From Trichoplax adhaerens (taxonomy: Eukaryota; Animalia; Placozoa), in assembly GCF_000150275.1 (NCBI RefSeq), contig NW_002060943.1:4484008-4548007 (forward strand): a stretch of DNA of 64,000 nucleotides. Direction: 5' to 3'. The notes under the pieces were generated by a model. It was not told where the DNA came from. It worked only from the letters and a program-made list of their open reading frames with translations, and did not search any database. Shown here piece by piece: positions 1,436 to 61,616 of the stretch. The position numbers and the translations under genes were made by a program. How positions within the stretch are numbered: the stretch's first letter is position 1; each line of letters starts with the position of its first letter.

Positions 1436-4400
1436 TTAGTTTTTCTTATCAGTAGTTTCCGATATTAACGACGCTTTAATTAAACTTTGCTTAATACGTT
1501 CCTTGTCAGGTCGTCGTGACCTTACCCATTGCGCTTTAGCTTCAATATTATGCAATTTCTCTTGCAGAGTAATATAATGTTCACCACATGATATGCAAAC
1601 AAGCTGGTCACGTTGGATATCATTAAAATATTTTATTATTTTGCCGTCTCCATCATATAACTTCCTTGCTGCTGAGGCTATGCTTAAGCGGCCAGTAGCA
1701 TCGGTTAGTAGCTCATCTAGGGTGGATCCAAATATAAATGTTGTCTTTTTAGGATCGGTACCATTCAGGTAAGCAGCTACTCTGATGGTTTTATGCTGTA
1801 AATATAATCGTCGGCTCATGGCTTCAGCTGATTTATTCACTTTATTAGCAGTAATAGCTGTAGTACTTTGAAGTTGTGATGCCTTTTCTTGTTCTAGATG
1901 GGCTTGAAGTTTATTGATGTTTCTACTCAATCGTTTTTCTAATATCCGATTAGAACTGGCAGATTTTTTATTGCTGCCGCTAACCGTCTGTACGCTAGAT
2001 TCATCACCAGTTTGCATCTGTCCTCTAACTTGTCGTAGGCGATGTTTAGTTTGTTGCAATAATAGCTCTGCGTGGCTGATTTTATCTCGATTCTTTTTTA
2101 CATTTTGTTGGTTGCTAATAACATCTAGAATAACAGAAAAATCGGGAGCAAAGTCTTAATACTAAACGAAATACTTGCCGTTTTAATCAATTTAACTTAA
2201 TTACATCTACAGCTACTATATCGGAAGTAAATTATCATGTAGTGACTTTTACTTTCTCGTAAGTGATAGAAAAAGGAACTGAGCAATATCTTCATCAGGG
2301 ACTTCTCCTAGAAGTTCCAGTCTTAGTTTATAATCATTTCAATCGTGGCAGTAATTGCAGTAATGTTAAATTATAGGAAAATTATCTGAATTAAAAATTT
2401 ACATGCTATTTTTGAGAAAATTCTGAGCCTGATTTATATATTTTGTAAATACCTGCTGGATTAATAAATGGTTCACCACAAGAAACCCAAACAGGAACTG
2501 GTCTTAACTTTAACTCTGCAAAATCGAAAACTTCTTCATCTTCTCCTTCAGTACTGGTCAAGACTGAGCTTAGTATATCATTATTAGCATTAATTTCAGG
2601 TCTTTCTCTCTCTATAATACTATGCTCAGAATTTTCAATGTCATTCTCTCTACCATTTATAGACTCAGCATTCCGTGACTGATTGTCATCGATAGATAAA
2701 TCTTGCATGTTTTCATTTAGTTCGGGTGGATCGTCGTCATTAGGCTCAACATCTTGATTAGTTGTATCTTGAGCTAGCTGGCTGTTGCTATCTACTAGAT
2801 TCCTGTTTTCGCTATTTTGTACTAATTGATCTCGTGATAGCTGATTATCACTGAATGCTTCAGCTTGATTGCAATTGCTGTCAAAGTTTGAGCTACCTTG
2901 ATCAAACACATCTGCACCTTCTTCAGTTTGATTGGTTTCCTCAGACGCGTTTTCCATATTTGGATCAGGATTGTCTTGAGATTGTTGTTCTTCACCGTTT
3001 TCGATTTCATGCCTATTTGCTATGAGATCCGGCTCTTGGTTATTTAATATATAAGTTTCATTTTCTCCATTAGTTTGTTGATTGCCTTCAACATTGTCTC
3101 CATCTTTTTCTAATGCCGCTTGCAATGTATTTATATTCTTCATCTCCATTTTAGTATTTGATTTTGCTACCTGGTCTATCTCATTTTCCTGATCAGATGC
3201 TGTTTGTTCTAAAGTTTTCTCTAAAAGGCCGTAAGTTAAAGGATCAACTTTATATTTTCATAGATTGATTCCAAATCTAGTATTTAATTTACAAATAAAA
3301 CTTTTGCTAATTACCGAGCCTATCTAGAGAAGCTTTAGAAAGAGATGCTTTTCGCTTCATTTCGCGATATAAATCATTCATATCAAGAATTAATTTCCCG
3401 CGACGACTATACAATCTTCTAGCACTTCTAGGCAGTCCCAACCTCGTTGTGCAAAGATCCAGTAGCTAAAAATATTTTAGAATTAAAGAGAACTTGCAAT
3501 TATAACTATAACATAATAATAAGTCGAAAGTAATACTGCAAGATTAGCTATATGTTGTTGAGCACTTCTAATATTAAAGAATAAATTAACTAGTGAATAG
3601 TGCTTACAGCACGAGCCTACCTCTGTGATGCTAGAGCCACTAATAACAGCAGCCTCATTCTTGTTAGCTCTACCATTTCTGTAAGCAAGTACTTTAACAT
3701 GATGAACTTGTGGTGCTTGTTTAATATTTTGCGAAATAACCTTAACGTTCGTTGCTTGACGTAAATCATTGACTTCACTTTCCCAATAGTTTTTAGTCTG
3801 AACAGCATTTTCAGTCGTTAAATCAACCTAGTTAAGAATGTAATGAAATTGTTTCAATATTAGCTAATTCTAATCCGTAAATAGTATAAATTTGACATCT
3901 ACAAGATAATGCACATTGACGTGATGTATCATAGAGGAATATACCTTTCCATGTAAGCATTTTAAGGTTAGCGGCAACTTTAGAGTGTTATTTGTTGCTA
4001 CAATTTATTGAAAAAAGTCGGCAGTTAATTATTGTTTGTTAGCAAATTTTTGATTCGTCTACCTCTATTTTTGCTGCTATCATTTTGCAATCCTCGAAAT
4101 TAACGTATAAAATATACGACTATTTTAAACCTATCTGCAATTTAGACTATTACATCATAATATTTATTATCAATATCAATATTCCTTTTACCATTAGGTA
4201 ACTATACTTTAATTAATAAAAATAATAATTGTATGAGCTAATACCGTAATTGATTGCATATGGTAGTAAAACGCAAATCTTGTGGACAAAAGCATTATGT
4301 AAATGTTAATTTATATCATTTGTTAATGGTTATATGAAGGGGTTCTTGTCGTCATTAAAGGATTGTTTGCAAGGATTTTACTGTAAACGTTATAAAGTGC

Positions 4401-7400
4401 TAGACAGCATTATAACTATGTAAATATGATTGCTGAATTTTACCATCTCCCATCGCACAAGCGAATGCCACTGGATGTTCTATACGCTTAAATTTTCTTC
4501 GACCTCTAGCTGCTTTACCGCAGGCATCGCATAAGAAAAGTTCTTGATTTCCCGTCAACGCAATATAAGTAAACCCCTACAATAATATTGTTCCGCATTA
4601 TCTTCTAAGCTGAATTTTTTAAATTAATGGAATTTATGCAAGTACCGGCTGGACAATTTTGATGGGTCCCATAACCGCAAAAGTGCATAAGCTAGCATTA
4701 ATTGCCGCTGTAATTTCTGTTTAGAAATCAATTTTCAATTGCACTTATTAGTTTTTATTGTTAACCGTTATCTTGAAGGCAAATATTATGCTAAACTTCT
4801 TAAGGGCCTTATTGCATTATAATTAAAGCGTTGATCTTAAGCACCTTTATCAAAAATATCTGTCGAAAATGCTTCAATCATTTGTGTTATAGGATTATGA
4901 TGCCATCGTTGATGCCCTTGGCCGTAATCAAATGATTTAACTTGTTGTATAGTAACGGTAGCTTTATCATATGTGGCAGATTTCGGCTGATATAGACTAG
5001 GCATGGTAACGGTTAAGCCCAATTTCATGTTAAATTTAGCTAGAATATAACTAGAATAGATCATTGAAAGCGAATGAATAATATTATCAGGTTTATAATT
5101 AATATTAATAATAAGGAGTTGCAATCTATCTGTATTGTAATTTATTCGTGCAATCATTGCATGATTTCGGAAAGTATCAGTTAGAGAATCTAATTTTATA
5201 TCTATCCTAATAAAGCTGAGGTATACTGATATTTGCGAATACTAAAAACTGTAATTTAAGTCAAATACAGTCCTTCATTATTTAAATTTAAGAAACTAAA
5301 ATTCTAATAATTTTGTTTGTATTGTATTTGAAGTTGTGATATTAACTTACCCATCTTCTGTTATGATCCATCTTTGTGTGATATCGGTTACATCCTTTTT
5401 CTTTAGGATGATGCTGGCATTGGGTATTAACTAAATCAATTCAGTTAAATACAGAATTAATTGCTTCATAATGGAATTCTATTCGTAACCGTACTGATAT
5501 TATAAATAAGGTCGATTGGAATGATTACTTGTAAGTGGAAAGTCTCGTTATATTTTTAAACTGTAGTATTGTACCTCTCCATCTGCAGCTAACACAATAT
5601 TAGGATTAGATTTACAACAGATGAAATTTTGCTTTGTAAATAACCACTGCTGGGCAATATATGCTTTCTCAATCTTTTTATATGTGTCTTCAGATGATCT
5701 AGAAGAAAATGATTGACATCGAGTAAAAACAGCGTTGAAAATATCTTCTGTATATGATGATACTATAACGTCATTAAGATAGAGAGTATCCTAGTAGAAG
5801 ATCATATATTTCTGTAATTTACTTCATGTTGATAATCTGCCGCATGACTTCCATTTTAGAATCATGATTTGCTACCGCTTCATCATCAGTTAGTAATGGA
5901 TGTGAATTTAATTGCCATGGCTTTTTCAATTTCTCTAATCGTTCATCAGCGCGTGCATGGGACATTTGGTGGTAACTTTCATAATCCTCATCGTCTAAAT
6001 CATCTTCAGCCATAATTCCATGATAGATTTTAGTCAATCGATCCCTTTCCTTGGCAGTGATAGCGCTCTTACCGATACGAATACTGGATTGAGTAGTGAT
6101 TAACTCAGATGCAGAAGGTTTAATCACATCCAAAACAAAATCTAAAATAGAAAAATCGATTGATAGCTCTTAATTAGGTTATAGTATAAATAATATTTCA
6201 ACTTAGAATTTATGAGACCTCATATGTAGAGAGAGATGTGAAGAAAATTTTTTGTAACAATGACTACCTAGATATTTACTGCCTGCTTACCTGCTGGATG
6301 ACGTAAACTGCAAAAATATTTCAGCTTGTCGACGTCATGCATTAATATGGTTAACAATTCTTTCTTTTTCGTTTCCATTTTAATTGACTTAGGATTAACC
6401 CAATTCTCACCACAAGATATATATAATATCGTTTCGTCCGCCTCAATGGCATCAAGGTTCAATAATTCTTTACCTTGGATGTCGAAAACTCGTCGAGCAG
6501 CAAATGGTAATTCTAATTTACTAGTGCACTTCTCTAAAAACTAATCCGATGACAGAAAATTAGCAGTTAATCTAGCACTCTGGCCGATAAATGAAATTGT
6601 AATTTGTGGTTGTATCTGTCTGATTTGTATGATACTTCAAACTAAAATGAATATGAACGATTACAGTATTTTTGGACTGACTAATTTTTCCAAACTAAGC
6701 ATTTACGTTAAATCTCATTTTTATTCTGACGGTAATAGGGATAGTGTTTACCCAGTTAATGTTTCACGTTTAATTCAATGATTATTAAATGAATTGATAT
6801 AACTTACAGTTTGCATTTCGGCATCGAACTCTGTTTCTTCAGTAGGTGAATTAAATGAATTTCTAATCGAACATCAGTTACATGGTTGTATTTACTTTTT
6901 CGTATATGAAGCAGTAAGAGATTTCTCACACATTATGATTTTACATTACAAATAAAAGCTTACTTGGAATTAGAATTGCCTTGTACTTTTGGAGAAGTCT
7001 TTATATAATATGCAATGTAAGATAATAAATGACAGCTGAGAACTACCACACGATATCTACTAATAGCTTCACAGTCGTTAGTAGTACTGTACATCTAGTA
7101 TTAAACCGTACAATTTCTAGCATTATACTCTAATTTACCCATGACTTCTTCGGAATCACGATGGTCGCAGAAATCTCGTTAAAATTACCGCCATTTCGAT
7201 ATACTTTTATACTTCTACATGCTATCACAAGTAAATAATAAGAGTGCTGTTTACTATCTGTAAATGCGAATATACCTTGACATAGGGTGATTTTCGAACA
7301 AGCCAAGGAAAGAATGAACTTTTTTATAGCATACTCAAAAATCTCGAGTATGATTATGTACTAACCTATGCTAGTTTTATTAATATCGCCGGACTTAGCT

Positions 7401-43569: not shown

Positions 43570-44663
43570 AATAGGGATGATTATTCTCGCAAATTACGGA
43601 CTACATGATGAGAATTTCTGATTTAAAGGAACACTTAAGAGGTGAGGGATTGCAAAATGCAAACTATCGATTATAATCACTACCAATAATGTGCAGGCAG
43701 ACTATTCTGCTGTGTTGTATTCGGATAACGTACCCAACGTACTCGCAAAACTGAACAAAATGGTTGCAGATAGCTAAAGAAATGTCCATTTCGACAACCC
43801 ACAGTAAAACAGCCTCCATAATTCTAGAATTTTTCTAGCAGAGAGACGTGGGAAAGTTTGAAAATAAATTGTCAAATGTGAATGAATAATGAAACCTAAA
43901 GTGGAGTCTTGAATCTTGAGGTCAAGATTTGACAGTTTTTACTATGGAATGCTAAACCTTTTGAAGATTTCTTTGTGAACTTTACCATATCATTGGCGGA
44001 TAGATCGTTTGCAGTCCTTTTCAATTCTCATAATCTCCCTCTATTACTGTAGCATGGACATCGAGGTAAGGGAAAAAACTCCTTTTTATGCTTTTGATCT
44101 GTATCTTAGCGCACATTTACAGCTGCCATCGATAAATCTGAGATAGCAGTAGATGAACTCGCACTTTCTACCAGAGTACTCAGTACAGAAATTTGTAATA
44201 AAGACCCATAGAGGTAAGAAACAACCTCTATNNNNNNNNNNNNNNNNNNNNNNNNNNNNNNNNNNNNNNNNNNNNNNNNNNTCTTGTATGGTAGATAGTA
44301 GAGACCATAGACTTGCAGAAGAATACCTGGAGTGAAACTCTTTTGGACGGACAGACATTTGACCTATTGTCATCTGGTCAACATATTGTATTCAACACTT
44401 GATTATTATAACCACTTGTAAAGAGTGCTTTAGTAAGGAGATAGTCGATTCTAAATTGGCTCATTTTTTCTAAATTAAGTAATTCTACATTGCATTCCAT
44501 TGCCTGTTGCTAAGCTCTGCTTGAAGTTAGTAACCTTAGATCATCAATGTTATTCAAATTAATACGAGTGATTTAGAAAACAGTCATGGAAGATCCATAC
44601 TGAGTACAGTAGCTATTTTTCGACCTCATCTGGTAAGGGAAGTCCGTCCATCCGAGAAGTGTG
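43570..44663 (+). pseudogene. Probable degraded HECT-domain E3 ubiquitin ligase fragment
   Basis: Motif-like pieces appear in HECT order across different frames, with stops: 'ELYHIIG' (about 43976), 'FYQS' (about 44166), 'TWSETLLDGQTFDLLSSGQHI' (44324-44387; compare F..DG...ELIPGG..I), 'IPLPVAKL' (about 44495) and 'WKIHTEY...SPSI' (44587-44652; compare DWKxHTxY...SPxI). The region is interrupted by the N gap. Confidence 0.45.
44232..44281. other. Assembly gap (50 N)
   Basis: Run of N bases. Confidence 0.99.
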
Positions 44664-44675: not shown

Positions 44676-45415
44676 GTGTACAGTACAGTACAGTGTACGG
44701 TACACAGACTAGACACCCTCTGTAATAAGGGTCTCTATCGTACAGTACGCTAGAGCCTCTTTAAAGAGAGACATGACAATCTGTTGTTATAATAGACGAC
44801 AACTGTCCTCTCTAGAGACCCTTAAGTTAATGTACACTTGTACAGACAAGCGAAAGGAAACCTGGATTGTTCCAACCAGTGCTCCGTACAATCCTATTGT
44901 TGGCTCCAACCAGAGACTAATATCAGCACTGAAAACTAAAAAAAGAAGTTGCGTAGTCCTAGTCCGTACTCTCACCTAAATGAGTACAGTACTGGCTGCT
45001 TGCAGTACTGACAGAGTACAGTACAGCTGTACAGTACAGTACTGAACTGACTGAGTACCGTACTGACTGAAATTTCACTTAATAATGTACTGTACACTGT
45101 ACAGTACTGTAGAGTCAAATTATTTTAAGTAGAGTTTAACGTATAAATTGATATTTTTACAATTTTTATTACGATGTTTGAATTTTGAATTATCTAGGCT
45201 ATCAATTGATACCAAATTTGTCTAATTTTGTCTTGAAATTATGTTTCCATATTATTTCAATCAGACGGAATTTTTTGGAGTGTCTTCTTTTAGTACTGTA
45301 CTGTACAGTACTGTACTGTACTGTACTGTGTAGAGTGTACTGTACAGTGTACAGTACTGTACTGTACTGTACTGTACTGTACTGTAGGGTGAAGTTTAAA
45401 TTCTACAGTACTATG
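44676..45415. repeat. ACTGT/ACAGT pentanucleotide microsatellite clusters (about 44676-44706, 44983-45112 and 45293-45385)
   Basis: Visible directly, e.g. GTACTGTACTGTACAGTACTGTACTGTACTGTACTGTG... Both orientations are interleaved. Confidence 0.95.
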
Positions 45416-45781
45416 TCTTGCTTTCCCGACCGTTGCTCCAAATGAGCTGGCGGACCATTTAAAAAATAAAAAATATAAATAAAATAATTAATTATACAAT
45501 ATATACTGTACCGTGTACGGTGCGTATAGTAATATCGTTAAGGTACAGTACATTGATTGTATGTTATAGTTATAATTTACATTAGTGTATTCAAAATCGA
45601 TTTCCCTTGGTGTACAAGTATACTGTGTATTAGTGACTGACGACTGTATTCGTTATTTTTTAGATGTTGAGATATCAATGTTGCCCAGCTGTTCAATTTC
45701 ATAAGTAATTTTACAAGTGCAGACCTTGGATACCGCTGAAATTAACATCAAAAGGAGCTAAATCTTGGCTTTTATTTAATC

Positions 45782-48700
45782 ATGCAATTTGATCGATTTG
45801 GATTTGCTATTTATGGAAATACGGAAGAATCGCAGGACGACATTCGATATCATGATTATGAGTTAGTGAAAGAAAGATGAATGACGAATGCATTATAAAT
45901 ATCTTCAACTCTTAACTTGCATAAAAGTATATTAATTTTCAAGATTAACTCGATTATGCCAATTAGTACCGCTGTAGGATAATGTTTAGGCCTGATAAGG
46001 TTAGATGTATACGGGCACAAGTATTAATTACAGTAAATGGGATAGACAAAAAAAGAATTGCCATCGGCCGTACCATATCTCATGCAGTATGCAATGTCAG
46101 GATGCATAGATACATGGATACGTTCAAAACGAATTGTATAGTTATTGATTAATTCGACTTCCGATAGAAGCAATAGTAAAGCTTAAGATCGAGTTTACAA
46201 TAATCATATTGTTACCGTCGATGTAATGAAGACGGATAGTGATGATAACTTTCAAAGATAAGTGGCTATAGAAATCCGTTCCTATCCCTACCTCATCAGA
46301 TGAAGTAGTCTACTACTTTCTAACAATTGCATCCATTTCTTAACTTTACCACAGAAATGATAATTACTTGTATAAACTTGTTGGCTGTGTGGTAATATAT
46401 AAGGTTATGCTATAAACTTTTCAGAATTATATATACGTATTAAACAATTGCATCAATTTTATTAGTGAAGGAAGCGTTGATTCCAATTTTTTAACAACAC
46501 AACGTGTTTGGGAGAAAATAGTCAACAATTGGGAAAAATATACTAATGGATCTCCTAATAAAGTCAGTACCAAACAATCGATATCGCTGGTTATTAGAGA
46601 CGTGCTTTCTAACCTATAATAAAATTGAGTAAAGTGACATTGGATATCAGTAGATGCTTATTAATGACTGTCATATCTTACAGTTGAGGACGCATATTAA
46701 GCGTGGTATTCCAGATACATATCGATCAACCGTTTGGCAATTACTACTGGGCAGTAATTTCCTGATGTGTAATTCGGACTTCGATTATCAAGTTTGTAAT
46801 TGATGACTTCTATAATTGATTAGATTGCATTTTTATGTACAGTATATGTTGATTTGAATCCTTCAATTATTTTGCTTGCATTCATACGATATTGATAGGA
46901 AATGGTGAAAATGGTTTATCACGACTTAGTTGATGTAAATATTAGTGAGTATTGCATCGATCATGCAATTATTACCCTATCCAAATATGAATGTAAGTTA
47001 ACATATACTGGCCAGCTTGAACCATCATAACCTCTAAACCACAATTATTAAATTTAATGTACAAGTGACTATCGTTTCAGGCTCGTCTTCTATAGAATCT
47101 TCGAATATGACGGCGAAAACTGCAGCTCGCATTTCCATCATGAGACAAATTATGGTGGATATAGGTAATTGTGAATACCATCCGTGCTGAATTATTTAAG
47201 GGCATTGCATTCAGTGATTGTCATACCTTGCAAACTGTAAATTAAAATTTAAATAATCCTTATCTTGGTACATAGGACGTTCGTTTCCTACCCATCGAAA
47301 ATTTATGGGTGATCTAGCTGAAGGCAAGGAAGGAAGAGCTCAGTTATTTAGACTTCTAATGGTCTACGCATTGTACAATCCTTCTATCGGTTACTGCCAA
47401 GGTAGTAATATAAAATTCAAGGCATTAAATTTGGGGCAAAATTTTAGATAGAATCTTGACTGAAATGTAATGTACTAGTTTTATATTTGATATTCATTGT
47501 GTATGAACATTATCTAGGTATGGCATTTATCGCCGGTATGTTGCTAATGCACATGAACGAAGAGGTAGTGAATGTGAATGGATAAATGATTATCCTGTTA
47601 AAATCTTGCTATGATTCCAGATAATTTAGGCTAACTTTATTTTATTGAGGATGCTTTTTGGTCAATGGTGTCGTTATTTGAAAAATCGAAATATCTTAGA
47701 GGATATTTTGATAAATCTCTATCGCGGTATGCTCAACTATCATTTGCATTTAGTGATATACTATTCGAGTGACAATGTGTCATTAAAAGCCATATTAGAA
47801 GCTCTTGAAGAAGTTTTTGAACCATAACGTAATATTTAACTAATTAAATCATTTGAACAGGATTCACCGAAATGCGGAAGTCTTTTGGCGTATTCTTGAA
47901 CAAAAAATGCCTAAACTATGGCATCATCTTGTATGAAACATAATTTTATGTCTGATAGAATTGTAGCTTAATTATTTATCATTTTATGAATTTAACTCGT
48001 TTTTTTATAGGACGATATGAAAATTCACCCTCTTATGTTTATAACTCAATGGTTTATGACTCTTTATACTAGCCTTCCATGCTGGGATACTGTATTATGC
48101 ATTTGGGATATGACACTTTTTGAAGGTAACTATAACGATGCAGACTAATGTGCAAGTACTTTGCTTAAAATAGGTTCTGTATTGTTTGATCTATGCTTTA
48201 TCATTAAATTTATTAGGAACAAATAATTAATTCTTCATACATTAATGCTTGTACATTTTTTAGGAACTTCGACTTTATTTCGTATTGCAATTACCATTAT
48301 GATGCAGTTAGAAGGTATTCCACGATAACTCGTTCTAAAGAATCAGCGTCATTGTTGACGCTCCAGTATTGATTGCATGATTACCTTAGTATTACAACGT
48401 TTCTCAGTTTCAGAAATGAAAGGATTTCACCTTAATAAATCTTCTGTTTATTTAAAGTTGACGCTATTTTATAGCTTGTAAATAGTACTACACAAATTGG
48501 TGTTGCTCAATGTGTTTTCTAATTTGAACACAGACGAATTACTCGGAGCCACAAATTTAACTGATCTAATGCCATGTATTCTGAAAATTTCACCAAAAAT
48601 GTAAGTTATTCACGTTCACATTCTTAACTGCCAATTCCATATTACTCATTTATGAATATATTTGGTAATAGCGTTAAAAAATCAAAGTTTATACCGGCTG

Positions 48701-50162
48701 TGCGGAAGACCGTTCTCCCTGAATGGGAAATTGAAGCTGTGCAAGCAATTATCCATGAAGATAAAGCAGATGAAGGTATGCCACCAATCGTATTTTGTTC
48801 GTCATAAGTTAACAACATTATTTTAATCCAATTAATTTCAATTATGTAGTAGCGAAAAGGAAAAGGTTGGAACCAGAATTAGATGAGTTAGGTAGCAGGG
48901 ACAAGCGCAGTCGGATAGACGAAACCCAAGCTGTTGTTACAAGTAAGAAATAAAGAAATTTATTAGTCTAAATTATTTCTCGTTCCATGATATAATAACG
49001 TGATAGTGTAGTTATTATCGTGCAATTAACATAATTTAATATCTGGTATCATGCTATTATTAGGCGATAATCAAGTATCAGAGTCGAGTTTGCTTCAGAA
49101 GCTTGCAGGTATAATATCAGGAACTAAAGAAATAAAGAAGCATAAGGCGAGGAGAACTTCTCAAATCACCCCGAAAAGAAGACAAAATGATATCCGAAGG
49201 AGAAGGGCAAAACCTGTAATGATCGAAATGGTAAGATGATGTATTGTCCTTGAATAATTAATTATTCACTAAATAAGACAAGCTACTTCAATCGCTGTAT
49301 ACTTTAAACAAAAAATGAAAATTTACTCACGGTTTTATGACCATTAGAAAAACTTAGGAAACGTGAAAGTGGATAATTTAGCATCAAATGTATCGATGCT
49401 GAACAATCCATTGTATAGTGATGCTAAGTCTCGGAGCATAAATAATCAAGAGAATACGTTCTCCTTCAGGAAAGAGCTCAATAATGACCAGTTATTCGTA
49501 AGTTATGCTCAGTCATTCTCAGTCAAATTTAAATTTTCTAAATAATCGAAATTTAATAAGACTGTGATATTGTATTTAAAAATAAATACGGAAGCCTAAC
49601 GCAAGTGCAGTAAAACCTGCAATTGGAAGGTAAGGATAGTATATTATTGCAATTGCAAGTTACTTCAAAATTTGGCGATATGTGATAAGTTATTTTAATT
49701 CTTTAAAGTACGGCTAGAGATAAGCTATCATTCAAAATTTTCAACACTCCTACTCCTTCGAGGCTAACACAAGTAAGTGACATTACTGAATCATATTGCA
49801 ATGAGGACAACATTCTGACGAATGGTCAACTCAAGTTAAGATGTTCATATTAATCACTAGTCCAGTACTTTGATACTATTTGCAAAGATAGACATTAGGG
49901 AAAACGCTCTATAAAGTGCTACAGTATAGTTAACTTTACTGATCATGACATGGAGATAGAATTGAACGATCTTTAATATGTGTTTTACATGCTATTTCAC
50001 CCTAACATTAATACACTTACTCATTTCTGATTTTAAATAAAGAAAACTGCTAGAAATGATTGGTTCTGTAGTTCAGCAATTACTAATTCACCAGACGTTG
50101 AAATGAGCGACTTCAACAAGCAAAGTGTGCGATTGAAGCTTGAACTTGAGAATGTAGACTAA
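45782..50162 (+). CDS. TBC-domain Rab GTPase-activating protein (TBC1D10/USP6NL/GRTP1-like group), multi-exon
   Basis: Spliced translation: MQFDRFGF... 'LRTHIKRGIPDTYRSTVWQLLL'... 'RQIMVDIGRSFPTH' (IxxDxxR arginine finger)... '[32 protein letters not shown]' (YxQ glutamine finger)... 'PLMFITQWFMTLYTSLPCWDTVLCIWD..LFEG..LFRIAI'. The last exon ends ...KLELENVD*, TAA at 50160-50162. C-terminal exons are less certain. Confidence 0.9.
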
Positions 50163-51297: not shown

Positions 51298-51311
51298 GTT
51301 TCCATGGCAAC
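51298..51311. promoter_or_regulatory. RFX-binding X-box upstream of the CH-CH-ankyrin gene
   Basis: GTTTCC-AT-GGCAAC is one mismatch from the ideal GTTGCCATGGCAAC. It is followed by a donor-like CAG|GTAGT (about 51333) and the acceptor TTGTTTCAG| at 51819, just before the ATG at 51838. Confidence 0.8.
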
Positions 51312-51837
51312 ATAGAGTCTTACTCAATCGCAGGTAGTTTCTACCTTACAACAGTCATTTATCAGATATTAATATAATTTATAATTATTCTTACGCTTGA
51401 TTCATCGGATGAGTTAGCTTTTAAAACAACCAAATTCGAGAAAGCTCGAAAGCTTTATTAACCAAAAAGTACATTTAGTTTGCATAATAGGATTGCACTT
51501 CTATATTTTATAAAATTATCTGTTCATGATGAGCATAAAAATTTCATGATTTTTATGAGGTTTACGTAAAGACCATACTATAAACACACCATAAGGTAAG
51601 CTTTAAGTGTAACCTTCCTACCATCATAGAATTTACGATAGTTGTTATGTGAATAGCGTTTTACTTATGGTTACATAAATTTTAAGAGCCCTACGAGTAG
51701 TAATCCTAGAATATATCGCCAAATTGCACTAATATTATTTAAGAGACAGAGAGTATTATTATCATTATCATTGCATAACGTGAATAATTTGAAAATTAGA
51801 TAATAAAGAATTGTTTCAGGAAGTACATGTTGTAGCC

Positions 51838-54800
51838 ATGTCTGTTTTACGCTGCCGTTTAAATGGATTCTCGGCGTGGATTAATGTTCGATTACAGCCT
51901 TATGAGCACCAAATCAATAATGCCTTAACTGATCTTATGAAAGGAACTAATCTACACACATTTCTATTAAGTATGTAGTAATGTACTAATTACAGCTGTG
52001 CTAGAGATTATTTGGAGCAATAATTATAATTAAATCTCATCAATCGTAGCTCTTACTTTGCAGCTTTTTCGATTGTATATTTCAATAACTGTTTTTTATC
52101 ATAAATATACAAAGACTGATTCCTGAAATTCAATTACTTGATAGGTTTAACTGGTCGTAAGCCACGCAAAATCAAATCTTTCGAAAAGTATGCACAGTAG
52201 TATTTTAAAACTGGCTTACTATAGAATACTGATCTTCTTAATTTTATCTAGCCATCAGTGAAAATGGATAGCAGCTGTTGTTACATTATATATATAAGTC
52301 TAATTTAGATCATTTCAGTTCATTTCACTAACGACCAAAAGCATCAAATCCGGCTACTTTCATAAATTGGATTATAGAAATATTTACAAGAAGTTTAAGT
52401 CTACTTTATAATATAATTGTTAAGTAATGATATTAGAGAAAACGAGAACTTTCAGATGGGTCCGTATGCGAGTTAGTTATTAAAGTTATTACAGTTTAAA
52501 TCTAATATATGAATTTAATTTGGCAATCATAACTATAATTAGTCACGAACTAATACAGCTCATTACAGGCTAGACATAATTATGACTTCAAGAATTATAG
52601 TAAATTTTACCGTCCATTTTCAGTTTAATTAATGGCTCAGTGTAAAAATCTACTAATATTACAAGATATGTATGATAACTCTAGAAGAATTACAGTCAGT
52701 GTATCTAATGAATATGTTTAAAATTATTGGTAGACTAACAAAGTATCAAAAGGAAACTAGAATAGAATGGCTAATGGAAGAGCTTCTTCTCTTGTATGTA
52801 TAAAATAAGAATGGAAGATAAATGCTTTTTTAGCTGCAACTATCGCGTTATTTACGAGTATATTTATTCTATAGCGAAATTGTGCCGGATGACACAGTCG
52901 TTGATTGTAATTTATTTGTCCGCAAGAGCGCTGAGCAGGTAGAAATCATTCGATATATAACTTTACTTTGTTGCAGAAAAAATTTAAATGAATTATAATT
53001 GGTAAAAGTTAAACTATCGTTTCATATTTTATTGACTTAAAATATACAGAAGCTTCTTTTTTTGCCATGACTAAATCAAATCACGACATCAAATAAAACA
53101 TAATTATTTAATTAATTTACTAGATTTTCGATTTGCTATGGATGATTGTTAGCCAAGACATTTGGTTTCTATGGCAGCAAATGGATTTTTTACGCTCTAA
53201 TGATCCGAGAAAGTTAACGGTGACTCCACTATCGGTAGGACTATACCATTATAAACATTTTCTTACTTAAATTGCAAATACTTCCTCAAGGTTTTAAGCA
53301 GTTATTAGAAATTGAGCCTAGTTCATTTTTTTTAACAATAGTGGACACCTCCGGAACCCCCTCCACCGAGGCCACAATCTGCTCGAAAAATTTCATTACT
53401 ACAAGGATTTCGCTCTGCAGCATTCATAACGGAAGGAGAAGTTAAAGAATTCAACCCCGTTAGTCTGATACAATTACATTACAAATCTATAGCCTTAAAC
53501 TATCCTACTGACCTTTGATAACTAATTTATAAAATAAATAGTTGAATAAGAGACTTAATTATAGAAATGTAGTTCGGAGATTGTATTTGCAAATAAGCAT
53601 ATTACAGCAAAACCTTACTGGAATTGAAAAGATTTCTTTTAAATTTTTTGCGCCTATCTAGAAAGATCTCAAAGATGAAGAGTGCGACAGGTATGTATGC
53701 CCGTAATGAATTTCTGTCTAAAGCTTATTAATTCCGATGCTCATACTTTTAAAATATTAGCTTTTTCTTGATTGAGTACGAAATCATAAATATCAACTTT
53801 TTGATTTACTGTACTGTATGTTATTGTAACTGAATAATCGAGATAACTGTGGAATTTGATTTTTATTCAAATTATTGAATGCTTTTGTAAAGGCTTAGAC
53901 TATCTAGAAGGAAAGGAAACAGGTAAAAATTGCAATCTTTTATGCAAAAATTTAGCTCATGACGTACTATAGATCATGCTACCGATCATAAATTAACTTA
54001 AAGTACGAAATAAAGCAGAATCTCACTTCTGGTGGGCTGTCTTTGCTTAAAGATGCTTTAAATAAAATAAGTAAAGATTAAAAGAGTTAACAGAAGTTGT
54101 ATTGTTATAAGTACTAAGTGCAGCTTTGTATCTACGTCTTAATTTAAACAGAGACGAATACCCGTTTCCTGAAGAATGTGTCATTGATCTTATAAATAAT
54201 CAACTAAAAGTAAGCTACGAATGGTTAATTTTAAGTTAACATAAATTATCGAAATAGTAATTAGCAATGAAACAGTATGAATTATTAAGATAAATAGGCA
54301 CAAATTATGATAATTGACAGCTAATTTAACTACTTTGAGGGTAATTGATTATCATTAACCACTGACTTATTTATTGTTTTAAAAATATTCGTAGTTAACA
54401 AGGGAAGGCAAAAAATTAAAAATAGAAGTAAGTTTAGTGAAGTAAGCATTGAAATATATTCGAATTATTATCAGAGATAATATTTTCTTCCCTTGTATAA
54501 TTGTAGGCATTGAATGAGTTAGCAGATGGAAGGTAATGTAAAATTAACGTTCATTTAGCTGAAATATCATAATCTTACGCTAACGAAATTGTGTCTCTTA
54601 ATGTACTGGTTATATATAGGATACTATGTGCTTTGGTCAATTCTTTTGTACCCGGGACTTTCACAACTGAGGTTTTGCTTAACGATAGGTATGACTAGCC
54701 CATATGAATTTTATGCAAAACAATCTACATTCTGAAATAGCTTGTCATTTTATTAAAGCTTAACAATTAAGTTTTCTTCTGTAAATAAAGGTGGTCTATG

Positions 54801-57800
54801 AACTTAGCTATTAAAACGGCAGGAGATATGTTTGATGGTTCTCATCCAATTCATTCCGGCGATCTTGTAGAGGTAATATCTGAAGGAGTCTTCACAATAT
54901 GTTAGTCCTAAATTTGTTATTATTTGTGATAAATTAATTTTCTTTGAAATAATTTTAGGCTGATAGTGTGGGTTTGTGCGCATTTTGGGCATCATTCTTC
55001 ATGCTTGGTTATAAATATCGGCAAAGCATGGCAGCTCTACAGACAAGAGTTAGTAGTCGTTTGAATTAATTAAGTAGTGACCACTCAGGTTCTAGTTCAT
55101 TACTAGATCTCTTTTTCGCGATTGAGTTTTAAATAGTATTAATATCTTAAACTAAATATCATGCAAAAAGTTCACTCATAATTTACACGATTAAGTTAAG
55201 CGAAAGTCGTACTCATTTCTTAGTTATGCAGATGTAATATTTGATGTTTAGTTATTAAGATGAAATTAAAATAGAAGAAAATAATTTTAAGGGTTTAACC
55301 CTAGACAAAACTTAAAAGCCTAGCTATACGTAAAATAACCGCAAAAAGGACTGTTTTGAATCTATTCTTATCAATTTTTTTACACTAGAAAAATTTACAT
55401 TTGAAGTGCTTAGAATTGAAATCAGAATTTGATCAATTTCCAGCGGTTGTTTCTTCAATGGCTCATCTACAGAGGTGAAATTAGCTATAAATTTCAAAAA
55501 GCAACAAAACATTTCTTTAACTTTGCTATACCATGTTTAATAATAATACGTAAATGTAACGAATAAACTCATGGTGGAAAATAATTTTTATCCAGGCGAA
55601 CACAAATTGTTAGTAACTTACGGGAATTGGAAGAAGGTAAGCAGAATCGAAGAATTGAATCTAGTTTAACCTACTGCAATGTTACATATAGCTTGATTTC
55701 TTGTCTGCCTCCTAGAAATTGCCACAATAGAAACTAATTATGATTTAGAGATGTGTGAGAAGTGGAAAGAGAGAGTGGAAAGAGTTCAGAGTGAGGTACG
55801 TAACATAATACGTACATATCATAATTTATTCATTTAAACGATCGAAATAGCCAGTGCTTGATTCGTGAGAGACTGAAAGTTTGCAGAATATATATATAAA
55901 CCACTACAGCTAAACAGTTAACCACAGAAAAAAATCTTCATGCTTATTTGATTCATGTACTTTTAATTACGTTTCTGAATACAGATGTACTGTTTATTGC
56001 AATTGCTTTTTCCTTTAATTCTGGCAATACGAATGATTATTGTTATATTTCCTTAGACTCGACATATCGTGGCAAGTAAAATAAGGGATCGCTTCGACGT
56101 AATTGAATTAGATCGGTAATTATAATATATTCATAAATAATTACTTATTTATGGCAATCAGTATAATACTCTATATAAGAACTATTGATAGCTTAAAAAT
56201 GTAAATCCGAATTACAACTACGGGTATCTTTTTTGAATGAAATCAGGAATATCACGATAAATGACTTGAGCGCTTCCTTGATGATCAATTTGGTAAGGCA
56301 AAAAGTTTTTAAGATGCTTACCTTATCTGTAATTCTATCTATTTAGATATTATATCATTTAATGTATCATCAATATCGAATGATTTAACGTAAATATATT
56401 CTTAGGAATAAATCTATTATCCCTACTTCGCTTGATTTATACAAATTTTCATATGCATACGTCATGCTCTAATTTATCGACTTTAATATACATCTTCAAT
56501 TAGCAATTAACCAATGGAACAGGATATTATTCTAGTAGTACTCGTGAAACCGTTTGGAACGGTCGTAGAATGATTTTAAAGGATAAGAAATCAGGTGAGG
56601 ATATAGGCAAATAGGAAATTATTATATGTTATCCACGTCCTTATTATTTTGCCAAGTTAAATTGATGAATAGTCTCGTCTATTGTCTAACATTTTTTTCA
56701 AAATATCTTGCTATAATTTAAATTTTTCGTATATCTCCTATTTTAAATAATAATAATTACCGTAGCTTTTATATCTATTTGATAGATTCATTCTTATTAC
56801 ATTTTTGTTAACGACTACTTTATAACAGGGCATTTTTATGATGATTTTACTACACGACGAAAAAATCATTGTAAGTTTATTAAACAACCGGAAAGTCTGC
56901 AGAAAATAAGACGATATTATTATGTTGATACCTAGATACTGTAGATTGATCAACTATTAGTAAATCAATACAGCCATCTATATTAATTATTTGCAATAAA
57001 CTAATCACTACTTTAGCCGATGTTCGTTCTATTCTCGGTTTGGATCCTTACGAAGTTGTGGAGATTTCACCTAATGATGCCAGTAATTATGAAGTAAGAG
57101 ATTATCGATCCTATAATGTGATTAAAACTCTGCTAGTTTCATTTAGATTCTCTCAAATTAGTTCGTATTTCCTTACGTTGCATGTTACTATCAGCTTATA
57201 GTCACACCATGTTAAGGCATTTTTTACGTTGTTAATCTAGGTTTACTTTGAAAGTCCATCAAGAAATAAAATGCTTAAAGTTGGAACTAAATTTGTGTAT
57301 CAAGTCTTTCCAGGTAACACCTTAATATGTGAACGATTGTACCACAGAGCAGCAAAAATGGGTGAATTAGATACCATCAAGAAATTGGTAAAGTATTTGC
57401 TATAGCAATCATAAACCCGAATATATAGTCAGGATACTTTACTTTCTCACTTTTTATTATTTATCTTTCTCTATTAAAGCATTTATATATCAAATATGCT
57501 TAAATATTTAGTTCATACTTTATAAATTACTATCTTTTTTATAATTTTCAGGTCATATTCTTTAAGAAGGCCGAATCATTTGTGAACTCAAGAGAAAAAC
57601 GAAGTGGGAATACTGCTTTACATTTAGCTTGTAAACACGGCCATAAGGTGACTTACTTCTAGCACTTGATTTATAATCTTGCTATAGGCCTATTCTTAAA
57701 GTAGCTTTTAAACATCGATAATTGATAAAATTTAATCAAGTGTTGATAGTCTGAGAACGTTTGTATTGTAATAGTAACTGATTGAGTATAGTTATTTATG

Positions 57801-60800
57801 ATACCTCAAGATAGAGTATAGAAATTTAGATTTAAAAGCTACACATATAATGCGTTATAATCAAGGATTACTGTTTGTTTTAGTTAGCAGTTATTCAATT
57901 GCAATCTTCTATTTACCTTAGGTAGAAATCGAGCTATTAATCTTAAAAATAATCATGTATAGCACGAAATTTAGTAAAATTATCTCCTATTTTTTATACA
58001 TTGTAAGCTTTAATCTTAGCTTCTTTGCTGCATAGCACATAATGTTAAAGCTTTACTATCATGAGAGACGAATTTGTTTAATTTACACTTTAAAAAATTA
58101 ATTTCTTCCTTAGGATGTTGTTATATACTTATTGGAATGTGGTGCTAATATTAATGCTTTAAATAATCATGGAAATACGGCTCTATTTGTATCTATTGAA
58201 AATCTTCATCGCGACATTAGTCAAGTTAGTATTTAAAGCTCTCCTATTTATGTATTTTCTGCTATTTATGAAATTTTCATATCACAATTAGTTTTCCTTG
58301 ATAAATTTGTAACTCTATAAACTCATTGAAGTATTTCATAGAGTCCATTAAATATGTTACGGTAGATATTATATTGTCAACGTTTACTTCTTTCCATGAT
58401 AGTTACTAATCGAATGGGGAATAGATGTCATGACCAAAAATCTTCACGATAAAACAGTGTTCGAAACGATTCGAAATAAAGAGTTTGGAGATTACCTGAA
58501 AGGTAACTATAGTTTAAGAAGCCAGAATGAACCTAAAAATACTCGGCAGTATTACTGTTGCATGATAAATTTATTCCATAACTCATAAAGAGTTTTTAGT
58601 AATAAATAAATGATAAATAGTCTATTTCTAAGTGATGGAACGATAGATATGATCGATTTATTGTGCATTGTGTCTTTAATCAGGAAAATATGAAGAATTA
58701 AAATCTTTAGTACCTGATATTATCAATGGCAACGCAGCAAGAATTGAAGAAAGTATCAAAAATCATATAGCCAATGTCAGTACATTTGCTAGTCTTCGCA
58801 GTCGTTTTATTAATGGTAGTACATTATTGCATATGGCTGCACACCATGGCAACATTGCTGCTATCAAGGTTATTGCGTACAGAGAAAATATTTCGGGAAT
58901 GAATCTTTCCCTATATACGTATATTTTACCATTAACTTTCAGTTTTAGTAAAACTTTAATTTCAATCATGGTAAGAATGCTTTCCTAAATCACATTTTAC
59001 TTTACAGCTTTTGCTATTTGATAATCGTTTGGATGTTAATGTCTTGGATTACAAAGGTGCAACGGCTCTACATCGAGCACACAATGAGGAAATTGCTACG
59101 GTACATACTTATATATAGATAATTAAATACTACCATAGATATTAGAATAATAGGGTATATGATAAAGTGATATATCCTAAATACATATGTGTTTAAGCTA
59201 ATTACTTTAATTCTGATTTGGCAGTTACTATTAGATTTTGGTGCGCATGTGGACGCTGTTGATGATGAAGGCAATACGCCTTTGCATACGAAGTGCTATG
59301 GAACGGCAACAAAAAGAACTGAAATGGATACCTTATATGTCTTGGTTTGTATCTTTTGCTGAATAATCGACTTTCGATATTTTAGTTATTTGAATATCGT
59401 AAGAAAAAACTGCTGCAGCGTAAATGCTGATGATAATAATTCATACTTTTGATTTAGATTAATAGAGAAGCTCCATTAACAGCTAGAAATAATAAAGTGA
59501 GATTTGATTTTAATTTCAATATATTAAGTTTAATATCAAAATCTCTTCTCTCGTGTTATTAGTAGCAGATTAAAATTGTTAAAAGGCTACATGGTACATA
59601 TTTGATGATTATAGGGCTTATTACCTGTTCATTGTGCCGCAATGCAAGGGAGAATTGATGCTTTGCAATTACTGTTTCAATATGATAAAGTTAAAGGTGC
59701 TATTAAGAAGAGTTTAAAGCAAGAAGATGAGGTAATTTACATTTTTGACTGTACGATCAAGTACAAAGCTAGCTAGGCTGTTATCCACTTTCGTTTGCAA
59801 TCAACTGATGATTGGCTATTACGTGATTATTTTTTCTTCATATACTATATTCGTGATCAATAAAAGAAAATTCCTAGTTTAGTTTACCTGGCAATAGCTA
59901 ATGACTTTCTAAAGTGTGCGAAGTGGTAAGTAAATCTTTAGTAAATATTTTCAAGATTAGGGTCGTCATAAATTGTAGTTTAAACTAAAACGAAGGTATT
60001 CAAATACAGAATATAAAATATGATCCAAGCTGTTTTAATAATTTAGTTCCGTCACATAAAATAAATTATAATAGACTTAAAATCATTCTTATCGTGAACT
60101 AATATCTCTATAAATACAAATTTTTTTACGAAATTAGTGATAAAGTTAAATTAGCGATTTTATGAGATATTTATATTTATCAGATTTGATTCTATATCTT
60201 GTTAGGCTGATTGACAATCATATGCAATTCAGAACCGGAGAACAAAACACTTTAGTTCATAAGCTTTTAGTTGAGCAAATTCCGAGGTAAAACATATTTT
60301 ACTTCTAGTTCTATATTTAACATTTACTCTTATTAAAGATGCATACGGTTAATGAACTTTGATTATTTTTTACTAAAATTTTTTTCACTTTCCAATAAAA
60401 AAATTAAAGTTCCGATAGAGCTATCACCTTTCAATTCTTATTAGCTAATGGGGCAAATCCTAACCCGAATTATCCTGGGGGTAATAGGTATGATAATACG
60501 TCTTCTATGTCGTTGAAGATTAGATTTCCAATTTTATAGCAATTGATCGAATACCATTTTACGGTTGTAAAATTTTCAGAGCCATCCATTTGGCTGCGGG
60601 ATTGTCGGGTAATCCCGATGTTTTAGAGCTACTTATTACTCATGGTGCTGAAATTAACGTAATGAATGCAGACAATAGCTCTCCGTTATTTTTCGCTACC
60701 AAGGTTAACAACTACCGATGTGCAAGTGTATTAATTAAATCCGGCGCTAATATAAGAATAAAAAATACACAAGGTATGATTTAATTTAGAGGGTAGCGTT

Positions 60801-61616
60801 ATGTTCTGAACTGCATATAGGCATATTTACCTAATTCATCTATCTGCACACGCTCCTTTGTATCATATCTTTGCATATTTAACTATCAATTCCTTGACAT
60901 ATTGTGCCACTTTAATATCACCTATTCTCAAGTTAAAATATTTGCCTGTTTATCACTAACGGTTTATAGATGTATTCGTTCCATAACTTTTCTTGTACAT
61001 ATTTTGATGCGGCCTCAATATTATTGCTTAGGTTTAACCGCTTTTGATTACATTGAAGATTTTGATGAATGGATCGATAGCCGTCATTTTGATGATGATA
61101 CTATAGCAAAATTAAAAGGTGATATTCATATGATTTAAAGTTTCATTTTTAATCCGTTAAAGAAAAATAGTTCTAGAATGAGTTTTAAAGATCAGTAATT
61201 CATAGAATTACACATAGGATATGTGTAAGATACGGCTAAAGCACGTAATATATTATTCAATCACGCCTGAATTTGGATGCTAGCAGCTATATCCATATAC
61301 TGCATTACTAGTATGAATATCATTAATTTTATTTTTATGTAATCGTTTATTGGGTCTAATCACGCGTAAAGTTATCACACTAGTAACTTTCGAGGTAATT
61401 TAGGATAAATGACGATGGTATGTTATTTTAAATGCTGATTTCTCTTTATTTTTGATAGCTTACAAGATTAAACATTCAAGAGATTTAATACATGCCATTT
61501 CGCATAAAATCAAAGGTAGCAATCAAGAAGAGAGAAGAATTGATATAGCTAAAAATTCTTATGCTTTAAGTAAAGCTTCTAATAGTAGAAGTGTTGTTTC
61601 TTTACCTCATATCTAG
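51838..61616 (+). CDS. Uncharacterised protein: two calponin-homology domains, coiled coil, an unassigned domain of about 130 aa and an ankyrin-repeat array (about 30 exons)
   Basis: CH1: 'LNGFSAWINVRLQ...INNALTDLMKGTNLHTFLLSLTGRK...QKETRIEWLMEEL...IFDLLWMI'. CH2: 'CVIDLINNQL...ALNELADGRILCALVNSFVPG...NLAIKTAGDMF...SGDLVEADSVGLCAFW'. Ankyrin repeats: 'SGNTALHLACKHGHKDVVIYLLECGANIN', 'GSTLLHMAAHHGN', 'GATALH', 'GNTPLH', 'GLLPVHCAAMQG', 'NSSPLFFA'. Intron phases were consistent in the manual splice. The protein ends ...SVVSLPHI*, TAG at 61614-61616. Confidence 0.88.

What the first reader, a model, noticed from the sequence alone, without database searches (positions are those of the whole stretch)
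51298..61616. Unnamed CH-CH-coiled coil-novel domain-ankyrin gene with an RFX X-box promoter: candidate undescribed ciliary/cytoskeletal protein
Seen: an intact gene of about 30 exons encodes tandem CH-like domains, a proline-rich linker (WTPPEPPPPRP), a predicted coiled coil and many ankyrin repeats, with GTTTCCATGGCAAC at its apparent transcription start. Established: X-boxes are bound by RFX factors and mark ciliary genes across animals; CH domains bind actin or microtubules. I know of no named animal gene with this architecture. Inference: it is an RFX-regulated scaffold linking cytoskeleton to partner proteins in ciliated cells.
Basis: partly seen in the sequence, partly recalled or inferred. 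Interest (0 to 1): 0.85.

Follow-up and report, generated by a model that had tools for sequence, protein, structure and literature searches.

The report
Unnamed animal-wide actin-binding ankyrin scaffold gene
This Trichoplax gene is real and belongs to an ancient, never-studied animal protein family that joins an actinin-type actin-binding head to a long ankyrin-repeat platform; one of only 17 perfect RFX sites in the genome lies upstream of it, which makes it a reasonable but unproven candidate gene of ciliated cells.

Summary
Observation confirmed. The gene is TRIADDRAFT_51756 on the + strand, CDS 51838-61616. The public 988-aa model maps exactly in 34 GT-AG exons. It misses three small exons, so my revised model has 37 exons and 1043 aa.

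Architecture, from two confident AlphaFold models of orthologues:
- a tandem CH1+CH2 actin-binding domain (Z 18 to alpha-actinin and filamin)
- a conserved WTPxPPP linker between the two CH domains
- three long helices
- an alpha/beta domain of about 130 aa with no Pfam family
- about 12 ankyrin repeats, then a C-terminal helix

Orthologues are single-copy and run from sponges and ctenophores to sharks, sturgeon, gar and amphibians. All are labelled "uncharacterized". None turned up in arthropods, nematodes, flatworms, teleosts or amniotes.

The X-box at 51298-51311 is real and lies 526 bp upstream of the ATG. It is one of 17 perfect sites in the 105.6-Mb genome, against 4 for a reversed control. 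At least 5 of the other 15 unique sites lie upstream of axonemal or cilium-microtubule genes: DNAH1, another dynein heavy chain, EFCAB6, a CIMIP2B-like gene and apicortin.

RFX control is therefore plausible, but a role in cilia is untested. The scan has flagged other X-box genes in this genome, but not this one.

The parts
51298..51311 (.). Perfect palindromic X-box (RFX site) GTTTCCATGGCAAC. It lies 526 bp 5' of the start codon, in the roughly 1.8-2.3 kb intergenic stretch after the upstream + strand TBC/RabGAP-like gene.
   Evidence: Unique in the window with 0 expected. It is one of 17 GTTNCCATGGNAAC sites in the genome, against 4 for the reversed control. No convincing ORF lies between about 49.5 kb and 51.8 kb on either strand.
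51312..51837 (+). Promoter and 5' leader region; the transcription start is unknown. A possible short non-coding first exon ends at the donor CAG|GTAGTT (about 51332/51333), and a strong acceptor TTGTTTCAG|G lies at about 51819/51820, just before the ATG. This is inference only.
   Evidence: Read directly from the sequence.
51838..53234 (+). Exons 1-5, aa 1-137: CH1 (type-1 calponin-homology domain). Includes exon 3 (52734-52793), which is missing from the public model.
   Evidence: Exact mapping. The added exon fills an orthologue-only block without gaps at 35-55% identity. In the orthologue model, residues 1-131 have pLDDT around 90 and align to the CH1 of actin-binding domains.
53342..53922 (+). 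Exons 6-8, aa 138-195: the conserved WTPxPPP motif, then a basic, poorly conserved linker predicted to be disordered.
   Evidence: W and P are nearly invariant. pLDDT is below 50 in both models. Identity to orthologues is 10-32%.
54152..55048 (+). Exons 9-14, aa 196-315: CH2 (type-2 CH). Together with CH1 it forms a closed tandem actin-binding domain.
   Evidence: Pfam CH PF00307 hits this region in orthologues at 17.6-33 bits against a cut-off of 26. Foldseek and VIA-align match it to alpha-actinin, filamin, plectin and dystrophin actin-binding domains.
55389..55795 (+). Exons 15-17, aa 316-384: the long-helix region, modelled as three long helices directly after CH2.
   Evidence: Helices 299-342, 350-376 and 379-406 in the Acanthaster model. 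It aligns with the actinin neck/rod in 7ank and with 4z6g. Sequence conservation is low, 12-32%.
56057..57387 (+). Exons 18-23, aa 385 to about 525: the alpha/beta 'middle domain', which has no Pfam family and carries the nearly invariant FLYQVFPG and SRNK motifs. It includes exons 18 (56057-56115) and 19 (56247-56292), both missing from the public model. The end of exon 23 starts the ankyrin stack.
   Evidence: Added exons: AG/GT sites, frame-preserving, 26-57% identity to orthologues with no gaps. The models show about 8 strands and 2-3 helices at pLDDT around 90. No Pfam hit and no Atlas lead.
57552..61118 (+). Exons 24-36, aa 539-991: about 12 ankyrin repeats in two blocks, separated by a helical insert (exons 26-27).
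   Evidence: Pfam Ank families hit single exons and orthologues at E down to 1e-49. The helix-pair pattern is visible in the model.
61459..61616 (+). Exon 37, aa 992-1043 plus the TAG stop: a conserved C-terminal long helix (LKAY..KH.RDL..AI) and a disordered tail.
   Evidence: Mapping. Conservation 24-58%. Helix 1004-1029 in the model.

Best explanation
The locus encodes the Trichoplax member of an ancient, single-copy, animal-wide protein family that has never been named.

The protein has these parts, in order:
- an alpha-actinin/spectrin-type tandem-CH actin-binding head
- a short helical rod
- a family-specific alpha/beta domain
- a platform of about 12 ankyrin repeats
- a conserved C-terminal helix

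The most likely mechanism is that the head binds F-actin while the ankyrin solenoid holds membrane or cytoskeletal partners. In effect, it combines the actin-binding end of spectrin with the cargo-binding end of ankyrin in one chain.

Transcription is probably driven, at least in part, by an RFX factor bound to the perfect X-box 526 bp upstream of the ATG. That would place the protein in the ciliated epithelial cells of the animal, for example at the apical actin network around basal bodies.

Shown here: the gene, its exons, the family, the folds, the rarity of the site, and the association of such sites with axonemal genes in this genome.

Inferred: actin binding, RFX binding, expression in ciliated cells, and any role at cilia.
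For: - Gene: exact 34-exon mapping of P0190, plus three conserved exons recovered.
- Family: colinear tblastn matches of orthologues along the whole locus. There were 91 and 45 family hits in two searches, all unnamed, from Porifera, Ctenophora, Placozoa, Cnidaria and many bilaterian phyla. The tree follows the species tree.
- Fold: the models have pLDDT 79.6 and 83.5. Residues 1-310 match the alpha-actinin actin-binding domain at Z 18.2, rmsd 2.8 A over 218 residues, filamin B at Z 18.2 and plectin at Z 17.7. They match the closed dystrophin actin-binding domain at TM 0.75, rmsd 3.8 A. phmmer also aligns CH1 and CH2 colinearly with actinin-2.
- X-box: unique in the window; 17 sites genome-wide against 4 for the control; RFX DNA-binding-domain genes are present.
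- Other perfect sites lie 5' of DNAH1 (E 7e-25), a dynein heavy chain (DHC_N1, 3e-50), EFCAB6 (4e-25), a CIMIP2B-like gene and apicortin (p25-alpha + DCX). Where a start codon could be read, these sites are about 0.2-0.5 kb from it; for DNAH1 and the CIMIP2B-like gene the first recognised coding stretch is about 1-1.7 kb away and the true start may be closer. The 526 bp spacing at this gene falls within that range.
Against: - There is no RNA, binding or localisation evidence of any kind.
- The transcription start is unknown.
- X-box conservation in orthologues could not be examined.
- About two thirds of the other perfect X-box sites could not be tied to a recognisable ciliary gene.
- The family is absent from every solved axoneme or cilium structure by sequence.
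- It was lost in amniotes and teleosts, which keep motile cilia. It was also not found for Xenopus, although ten other frog genera have it.
- Pfam recognises only CH2, and only weakly.
Confidence: 0.45

Rival explanations
1. The protein is a general cortical actin-to-membrane linker used in many cell types. The X-box is either bound by a non-ciliogenic RFX or contributes little, so the gene has no particular link to cilia.
For: The closest structural relatives (actinin, filamin, plectin, spectrin-type heads) are general cytoskeletal proteins. The family is lost in amniotes and teleosts despite their cilia. It matches no chain of a solved ciliary structure. Several perfect X-box sites in this genome lie near genes with no evident ciliary role, for example a PGS1-like gene and DDI1.
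Against: Perfect X-boxes are about four times commoner than the control and are enriched 5' of axonemal genes here. No orthologue was found in arthropods or nematodes, which lack motile epithelial cilia.
Confidence: 0.35
2. The CH domains bind microtubules, as in SPEF1, CFAP47 or HYDIN, and the protein is a structural component of the axoneme or central apparatus.
For: The X-box association with axonemal genes. There is a middling structural match to a CH-bearing chain of the mouse sperm central apparatus, 9ijj_4A, at Z 9.3.
Against: The best matches by far are closed tandem actin-binding domains at Z 17-18. Neither the sea-urchin orthologue nor any relative appears among the PDB axoneme chains, which include sea-urchin sperm doublets.
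Confidence: 0.08
3. The long gene is an annotation artefact that fuses a CH-domain gene with a neighbouring ankyrin gene.
For: None beyond the unusual architecture. The public model does contain errors: it skips three exons.
Against: More than 100 proteins from over ten phyla have the same colinear architecture at 1000-1100 aa. All 37 exons keep the frame with GT-AG introns.
Confidence: 0.02

Closest known systems
Alpha-actinin / spectrin / filamin / plectin / dystrophin family (tandem-CH actin-binding domain proteins)
   Same: An N-terminal CH1+CH2 pair in a closed arrangement, followed by long helices. The fold match is Z 18.2, rmsd 2.8 A over 218 residues. The CH1 helix A motif FTAW.N is shared with actinin.
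   Different: A conserved insert of about 65 aa, carrying the WTPxPPP motif, separates CH1 from CH2. There is no chain of spectrin or filamin repeats and no EF hands. Instead there is a family-specific alpha/beta domain and about 12 ankyrin repeats. Sequence identity to known actin-binding domains is only 13-21%. Actin binding is untested.
Ankyrins (ANK1-3) and other ankyrin-repeat scaffolds (automatic names 'ankyrin-3-like', 'ANKRD27-like', 'tankyrase-2' on some orthologues)
   Same: A long ankyrin-repeat solenoid that could hold several partners.
   Different: Pfam found no ZU5, UPA or death domains, and no PARP or VPS9 domains. The repeats are C-terminal and number about 12, not 24. The link to actin would be direct, through the protein's own CH head, rather than through spectrin. 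The automatic names are misnomers.
RFX/X-box ciliogenic regulon (DAF-19 targets in C. elegans, dRFX targets in Drosophila, RFX2/3 targets in vertebrates, cRFXa in choanoflagellates; PMC2873420, PMC2375033, PMC10530576)
   Same: A perfect palindromic X-box lies a few hundred bp 5' of the coding start. The same motif lies 5' of axonemal dynein, EFCAB6 and CIMIP2-like genes in the same genome.
   Different: No binding, expression or conservation evidence exists for this gene. At 526 bp from the ATG, the site is farther out than the 100-250 bp typical of C. elegans (PMC2873420). The gene has no orthologue in the organisms where the regulon was defined.

Membership tests
Tandem-CH actin-binding domain (actinin/spectrin type) | Two CH folds in tandem, type 1 followed by type 2, packed as one unit | tested here: met
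   AlphaFold models with pLDDT around 90 over both CH domains. VIA-align Z 18.2 / rmsd 2.8 A / 218 aligned to the alpha-actinin actin-binding domain and Z 18.2 to filamin B. Foldseek TM 0.70-0.76 to many actin-binding domains.
Tandem-CH actin-binding domain (actinin/spectrin type) | Recognised by the Pfam CH profile PF00307 | tested here: inconclusive
   CH2 scores 17.6-33 bits against a cut-off of 26, so it passes in some orthologues and fails in others. CH1 is not detected. There was no exon-level hit at this locus in the genome scan.
Tandem-CH actin-binding domain (actinin/spectrin type) | Binds F-actin | not testable with these tools
   Needs co-sedimentation or imaging with recombinant residues 1-310.
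Ankyrin-repeat proteins | Multiple 33-residue ANK repeats | tested here: met
   Pfam Ank, Ank_2 and Ank_4 hit window exons and orthologues at E down to 1e-49. There are about 12 helix pairs in the model.
Canonical ankyrins (ANK1-3) | ZU5-UPA-death domain supermodule after the repeats | tested here: not met
   Pfam finds only Ank families and CH in six orthologues.
RFX/X-box target genes | X-box matching GTNRCC(N0-3)RGYAAC in the 5' region of the gene | tested here: met
   A perfect 14-mer at 51298-51311, 526 bp 5' of the ATG, in intergenic DNA.
RFX/X-box target genes | An RFX factor is present, and the motif marks ciliary genes in the same genome | tested here: met
   RFX_DNA_binding hits at four to five places. 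At least 5 of the 15 other unique perfect sites are 5' of DNAH1, a dynein heavy chain, EFCAB6, a CIMIP2B-like gene and apicortin.
RFX/X-box target genes | Site conserved in orthologous promoters | not testable with these tools
RFX/X-box target genes | RFX binding and RFX-dependent expression | not testable with these tools
This needs ChIP, DAP-seq or EMSA, plus knock-down.
Ciliome (structural ciliary proteins) | Found in cilia by structure or proteomics | tested here: not met
   The sea-urchin orthologue P0130 matches no chain among the sequences of all PDB entries except a weak actinin-2 hit. The supplements of the comparative cilia proteome were not held. This does not exclude a cortical or basal-body role.
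Ciliome (structural ciliary proteins) | Phyletic profile follows (motile) cilia | tested here: inconclusive
   The family is present in all ciliated non-bilaterian phyla and many ciliated marine phyla. It was not found in arthropods or nematodes, but also not in amniotes, teleosts, flatworms or Xenopus. The searches rely on a word index and score only 8000 candidates.

The most novel reading that the evidence does not exclude
This is the founding, still unstudied member of a pan-metazoan actin-binding/ankyrin scaffold family that belonged to the ancestral animal RFX ciliogenic programme. On this reading it ties the apical actin cortex to basal bodies or to ciliary-membrane partners in externally ciliated epithelia. 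It was then lost repeatedly, in ecdysozoans, teleosts and amniotes, which would explain why no model organism ever revealed it.
Probability: 0.3. Interest if true: 0.75.

Novelty: new variant of a known kind. Interest (0 to 1): 0.55.

Why it matters
If the reading holds, an animal-wide gene as old as sponges and comb jellies has escaped study only because mouse, human, zebrafish, fly and worm lack it. It would add a direct actin-to-partner linker to the set of genes switched on with cilia. It also offers a tractable test of how far the RFX regulon reaches in a placozoan. Independently of function, this report corrects the public gene model by three exons. It also shows that the perfect X-box is a usable predictor of axonemal genes in Trichoplax.

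Tried and rejected
Splice sites and the transcription start rest on sequence and homology only.
- Pfam on single N-terminal exons gave nothing, and the genome-wide PF00307 scan did not hit this locus. The exons are too short and CH1 is too divergent.
- The first exon-based library search found no full-length Trichoplax protein, only a 71-aa fragment plus orthologues. The Trichoplax protein surfaced only through an orthologue query.
- The profile search with A1 added only ankyrin-only proteins beyond the family. No non-animal member was found.
- The ESM Atlas gave only the family's own cluster and nothing for the middle domain.
- The fold of the middle domain could not be searched alone. No reference exists for that piece, because it is split over six exons, and the fold-search lists were filled by the actin-binding domain. 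I therefore do not claim that the fold is new.
- Literature searches by gene identifiers and by architecture found nothing. The supplements of the cilia proteome were not held.
- Three further X-box neighbours (L006, L007, L014) could not be identified.
- A first tree run was killed for memory or time. FastTree was used instead.
- The joined 1043-aa revised model was used only inside scripts, for alignment and the tree. It was not sent to any search or folding tool. Searches used exon references or database proteins.
- Rejected: a fused-gene artefact, because orthologues are colinear. Rejected: membership of the canonical ankyrins, because there is no ZU5-UPA-death module.
Full report
**What is there.** The window is AT-rich (about 30% GC). 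It is part of scaffold C1414 of a 105.6-Mb, 1414-contig assembly.

The 14-mer GTTTCCATGGCAAC occurs once, at 51298-51311, with none expected in shuffles. The looser nematode-style consensus would be expected about once per window by chance, so only the perfect form carries weight.

Downstream, the + strand holds many short open stretches with GT-AG borders.

**The gene.** I searched with one distinctive exon by reference (58686-58871). This returned proteins of about 900-1100 aa that align colinearly with the whole locus by tblastn. Searching with the starfish orthologue then recovered the Trichoplax protein itself: P0190, TRIADDRAFT_51756, 988 aa.

P0190 maps letter for letter to 51838-61613 in 34 GT-AG exons, followed by TAG.

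A 16-species alignment shows two blocks that are present in every orthologue but absent from P0190. Both blocks are encoded in the two longest 'introns' of the public model:
- 52734-52793
- 56057-56115 plus 56247-56292

All three pieces have AG/GT borders and keep the frame. They align without gaps at 26-57% identity to orthologues from sponge to frog.

The revised model has 37 exons and 1043 aa. I kept the joined sequence inside scripts only. It was not sent to any search or folding tool. All outside searches used exon references or database proteins.

**The family.** Three searches found over a hundred orthologues. Nearly all are 1000-1130 aa. All are called 'uncharacterized', 'CH domain-containing', or carry automatic names such as ankyrin-3-like.

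The following groups are represented:
- sponges (Oscarella, Halichondria, Ephydatia)
- a ctenophore (Mnemiopsis)
- Trichoplax
- cnidarians
- echinoderms and hemichordates
- amphioxus and tunicates
- molluscs, an annelid, a brachiopod, nemerteans, a bryozoan and rotifers
- among vertebrates: a shark, sturgeons, gar, caecilians, a newt and ten frog genera

I saw no arthropod, nematode, flatworm, teleost, bird, reptile or mammal, and no Xenopus. These searches use a word index and score only 8000 candidates, so each absence is provisional.

A FastTree of 31 sequences follows the species tree. This fits a single-copy gene inherited from the first animals.

No paper mentions any of the gene identifiers I tried.

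**Domains.** Two AlphaFold models built on orthologue alignments are confident:
- the Porites N-terminal half, pLDDT 79.6
- the full-length Acanthaster protein, pLDDT 83.5

Residues 1-310 are a closed tandem CH1-CH2 unit. VIA-align gives:
- Z 18.2, rmsd 2.8 A over 218 residues to an alpha-actinin actin-binding domain
- Z 18.2 to filamin B
- Z 17.7 to plectin
- Z 13-14 to fimbrin

Foldseek gives TM 0.70-0.76 to dozens of actin-binding domains, and 3.8 A rmsd to the closed dystrophin domain. phmmer alone already aligns CH1 and CH2 colinearly with actinin-2, though weakly. Pfam sees only CH2, near its cut-off.

Between the two CH domains lies an insert of about 65 aa. The rest of the insert is basic and predicted to be disordered.

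After CH2 come three long helices. Next is an alpha/beta domain of about 130 aa with nearly invariant FLYQVFPG and SRNK motifs and no Pfam family. It is followed by about 12 ankyrin repeats in two blocks with a helical insert, then a conserved C-terminal helix and a disordered tail.

I could not fold or search the middle domain on its own, so I make no claim that its fold is new. I could not test that.

**The X-box.** The site lies in intergenic DNA. The upstream neighbour is a + strand TBC/RabGAP-like gene ending near 49.2-49.5 kb, and no convincing ORF lies between. The site therefore belongs, if to anything, to this gene. It is 526 bp 5' of the ATG.

A plausible short leader exon would end at a CAG|GTAGTT donor just after the site. 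It would splice to the strong acceptor just before the ATG.

The genome has RFX DNA-binding-domain genes.

Genome-wide there are only 17 GTTNCCATGGNAAC sites, against 4 for the reversed control pattern.

I fetched the other 16:
- Two are the same sequence on a redundant small contig, leaving 15 unique sites.
- One of the 15 sits beside a tandem array.

Among the 15 unique sites, the nearest downstream gene is:
- axonemal dynein heavy chain 1 (E 7e-25 to DNAH1 chains)
- another dynein heavy chain (DHC_N1, 3e-50)
- EFCAB6, a doublet-microtubule inner protein (4e-25)
- a CIMIP2B-like inner protein
- apicortin, with p25-alpha plus doublecortin domains

Spacing to a readable start codon is about 0.2-0.5 kb for three of these. 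For DNAH1 and the CIMIP2B-like gene the first recognised coding stretch is 1-1.7 kb away.

A sixth neighbour is an LRR_9/LRRC51-like gene, a weak match. Three others could not be named.

So in this genome a perfect X-box is a good, though not exclusive, flag for genes of the ciliary microtubule apparatus. Other readers of this scan have noted X-boxes near further ciliary genes in this genome. I treat those notes as leads only.

**How it most likely works.** The head has the fold of proteins that bind F-actin. The ankyrin solenoid is a classic multi-partner platform. The protein therefore looks like a direct actin-to-partner linker. The X-box makes expression in ciliated cells likely.

I put the combined reading at about 0.45: an RFX-driven actin scaffold of ciliated cells, for instance in the apical actin network around basal bodies.

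The main rival, at about 0.35, is a general cortical linker whose X-box matters little. A microtubule or axoneme role is less likely, at about 0.08. The match to tandem actin-binding domains is far stronger than to any lone CH. In addition, no chain of a solved axoneme, sea-urchin sperm included, resembles the family.

**Phyletic pattern.** Loss from arthropods and nematodes fits a link with motile epithelial cilia. Loss from amniotes and teleosts does not.

From my own knowledge, not tested here: the vertebrates that keep the gene are largely those with ciliated embryonic or larval skin, such as amphibians and sturgeon. Xenopus, which has such skin, did not turn up. I therefore count the pattern as inconclusive.

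**Comparison and novelty.** The building blocks are known. The combination, the conserved insert and the middle domain are not described anywhere I could search.

The sequences are already in public databases as predicted proteins. What is new is the recognition of a coherent, ancient, unnamed family, its fold assignment, the corrected placozoan model and the regulatory hint. I rate it a new variant of a known kind, with interest 0.55.

Noticed in passing
window 52734-52793, 56057-56115, 56247-56292: The public model TRIADDRAFT_51756 skips three conserved coding exons, 55 aa in all. The protein should be 1043 aa, not 988.
   Followed up: yes
L010 (G000:C1412:8198349-8206362), X-box at 4001, gene on the - strand from about 3790: The Trichoplax apicortin gene (partial p25-alpha plus doublecortin domain) has a perfect X-box about 230 bp 5' of its start. 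This fits the proposed link of TPPP-type proteins with cilia.
   Followed up: partly
L002, L005, L011, L015 (G000:C1388:228448-236461, C1406:2460040-2468053, C1413:2555231-2563244, C1414:10007508-10015521): Perfect X-boxes lie 5' of DNAH1, a second dynein heavy chain, a CIMIP2B-like gene and EFCAB6. This is direct in-genome support that the motif marks axonemal genes in Trichoplax.
   Followed up: yes
L007 (G000:C1408:3679156-3687169), X-box at 4001; ATG about 55 bp downstream on the + strand: An unidentified + strand gene starts right after a perfect X-box. It has basic, coiled-coil-like exons at 4523-4738, 4750-4956 and 5360-5557, and no Pfam or PDB match. It may be another unnamed candidate ciliary gene. 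L006 holds a similar case, a coiled-coil gene on the - strand.
   Followed up: partly
L001 (G000:C995:1-4554) and L004 (G000:C1398:555395-563408): The small contig C995 repeats part of C1398 in the opposite orientation; the translated stretches around the X-box are near-identical. This is probably assembly redundancy, so the 17 sites are really 16.
   Followed up: partly
L016 (G000:C1414:13209149-13217162), about 2750-3960: A tandem array of at least 11 copies of a 106-bp unit lies directly next to a perfect X-box.
   Followed up: no
window about 46400-49500, + strand: The upstream neighbour is a TBC/RabGAP-like gene, judged by eye from motifs such as RGIPD..R..VWQLL and YCQG. I did not run it against Pfam.
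   Followed up: no
window about 44150-44300; window 45000-45450; also L003 about 4410-4760 and L011 about 4360-4780: There is an assembly gap (a run of N) near 44.2 kb. A low-complexity repeat that translates as ...YCTVLYCTV... recurs at several unrelated loci of the genome.
   Followed up: no
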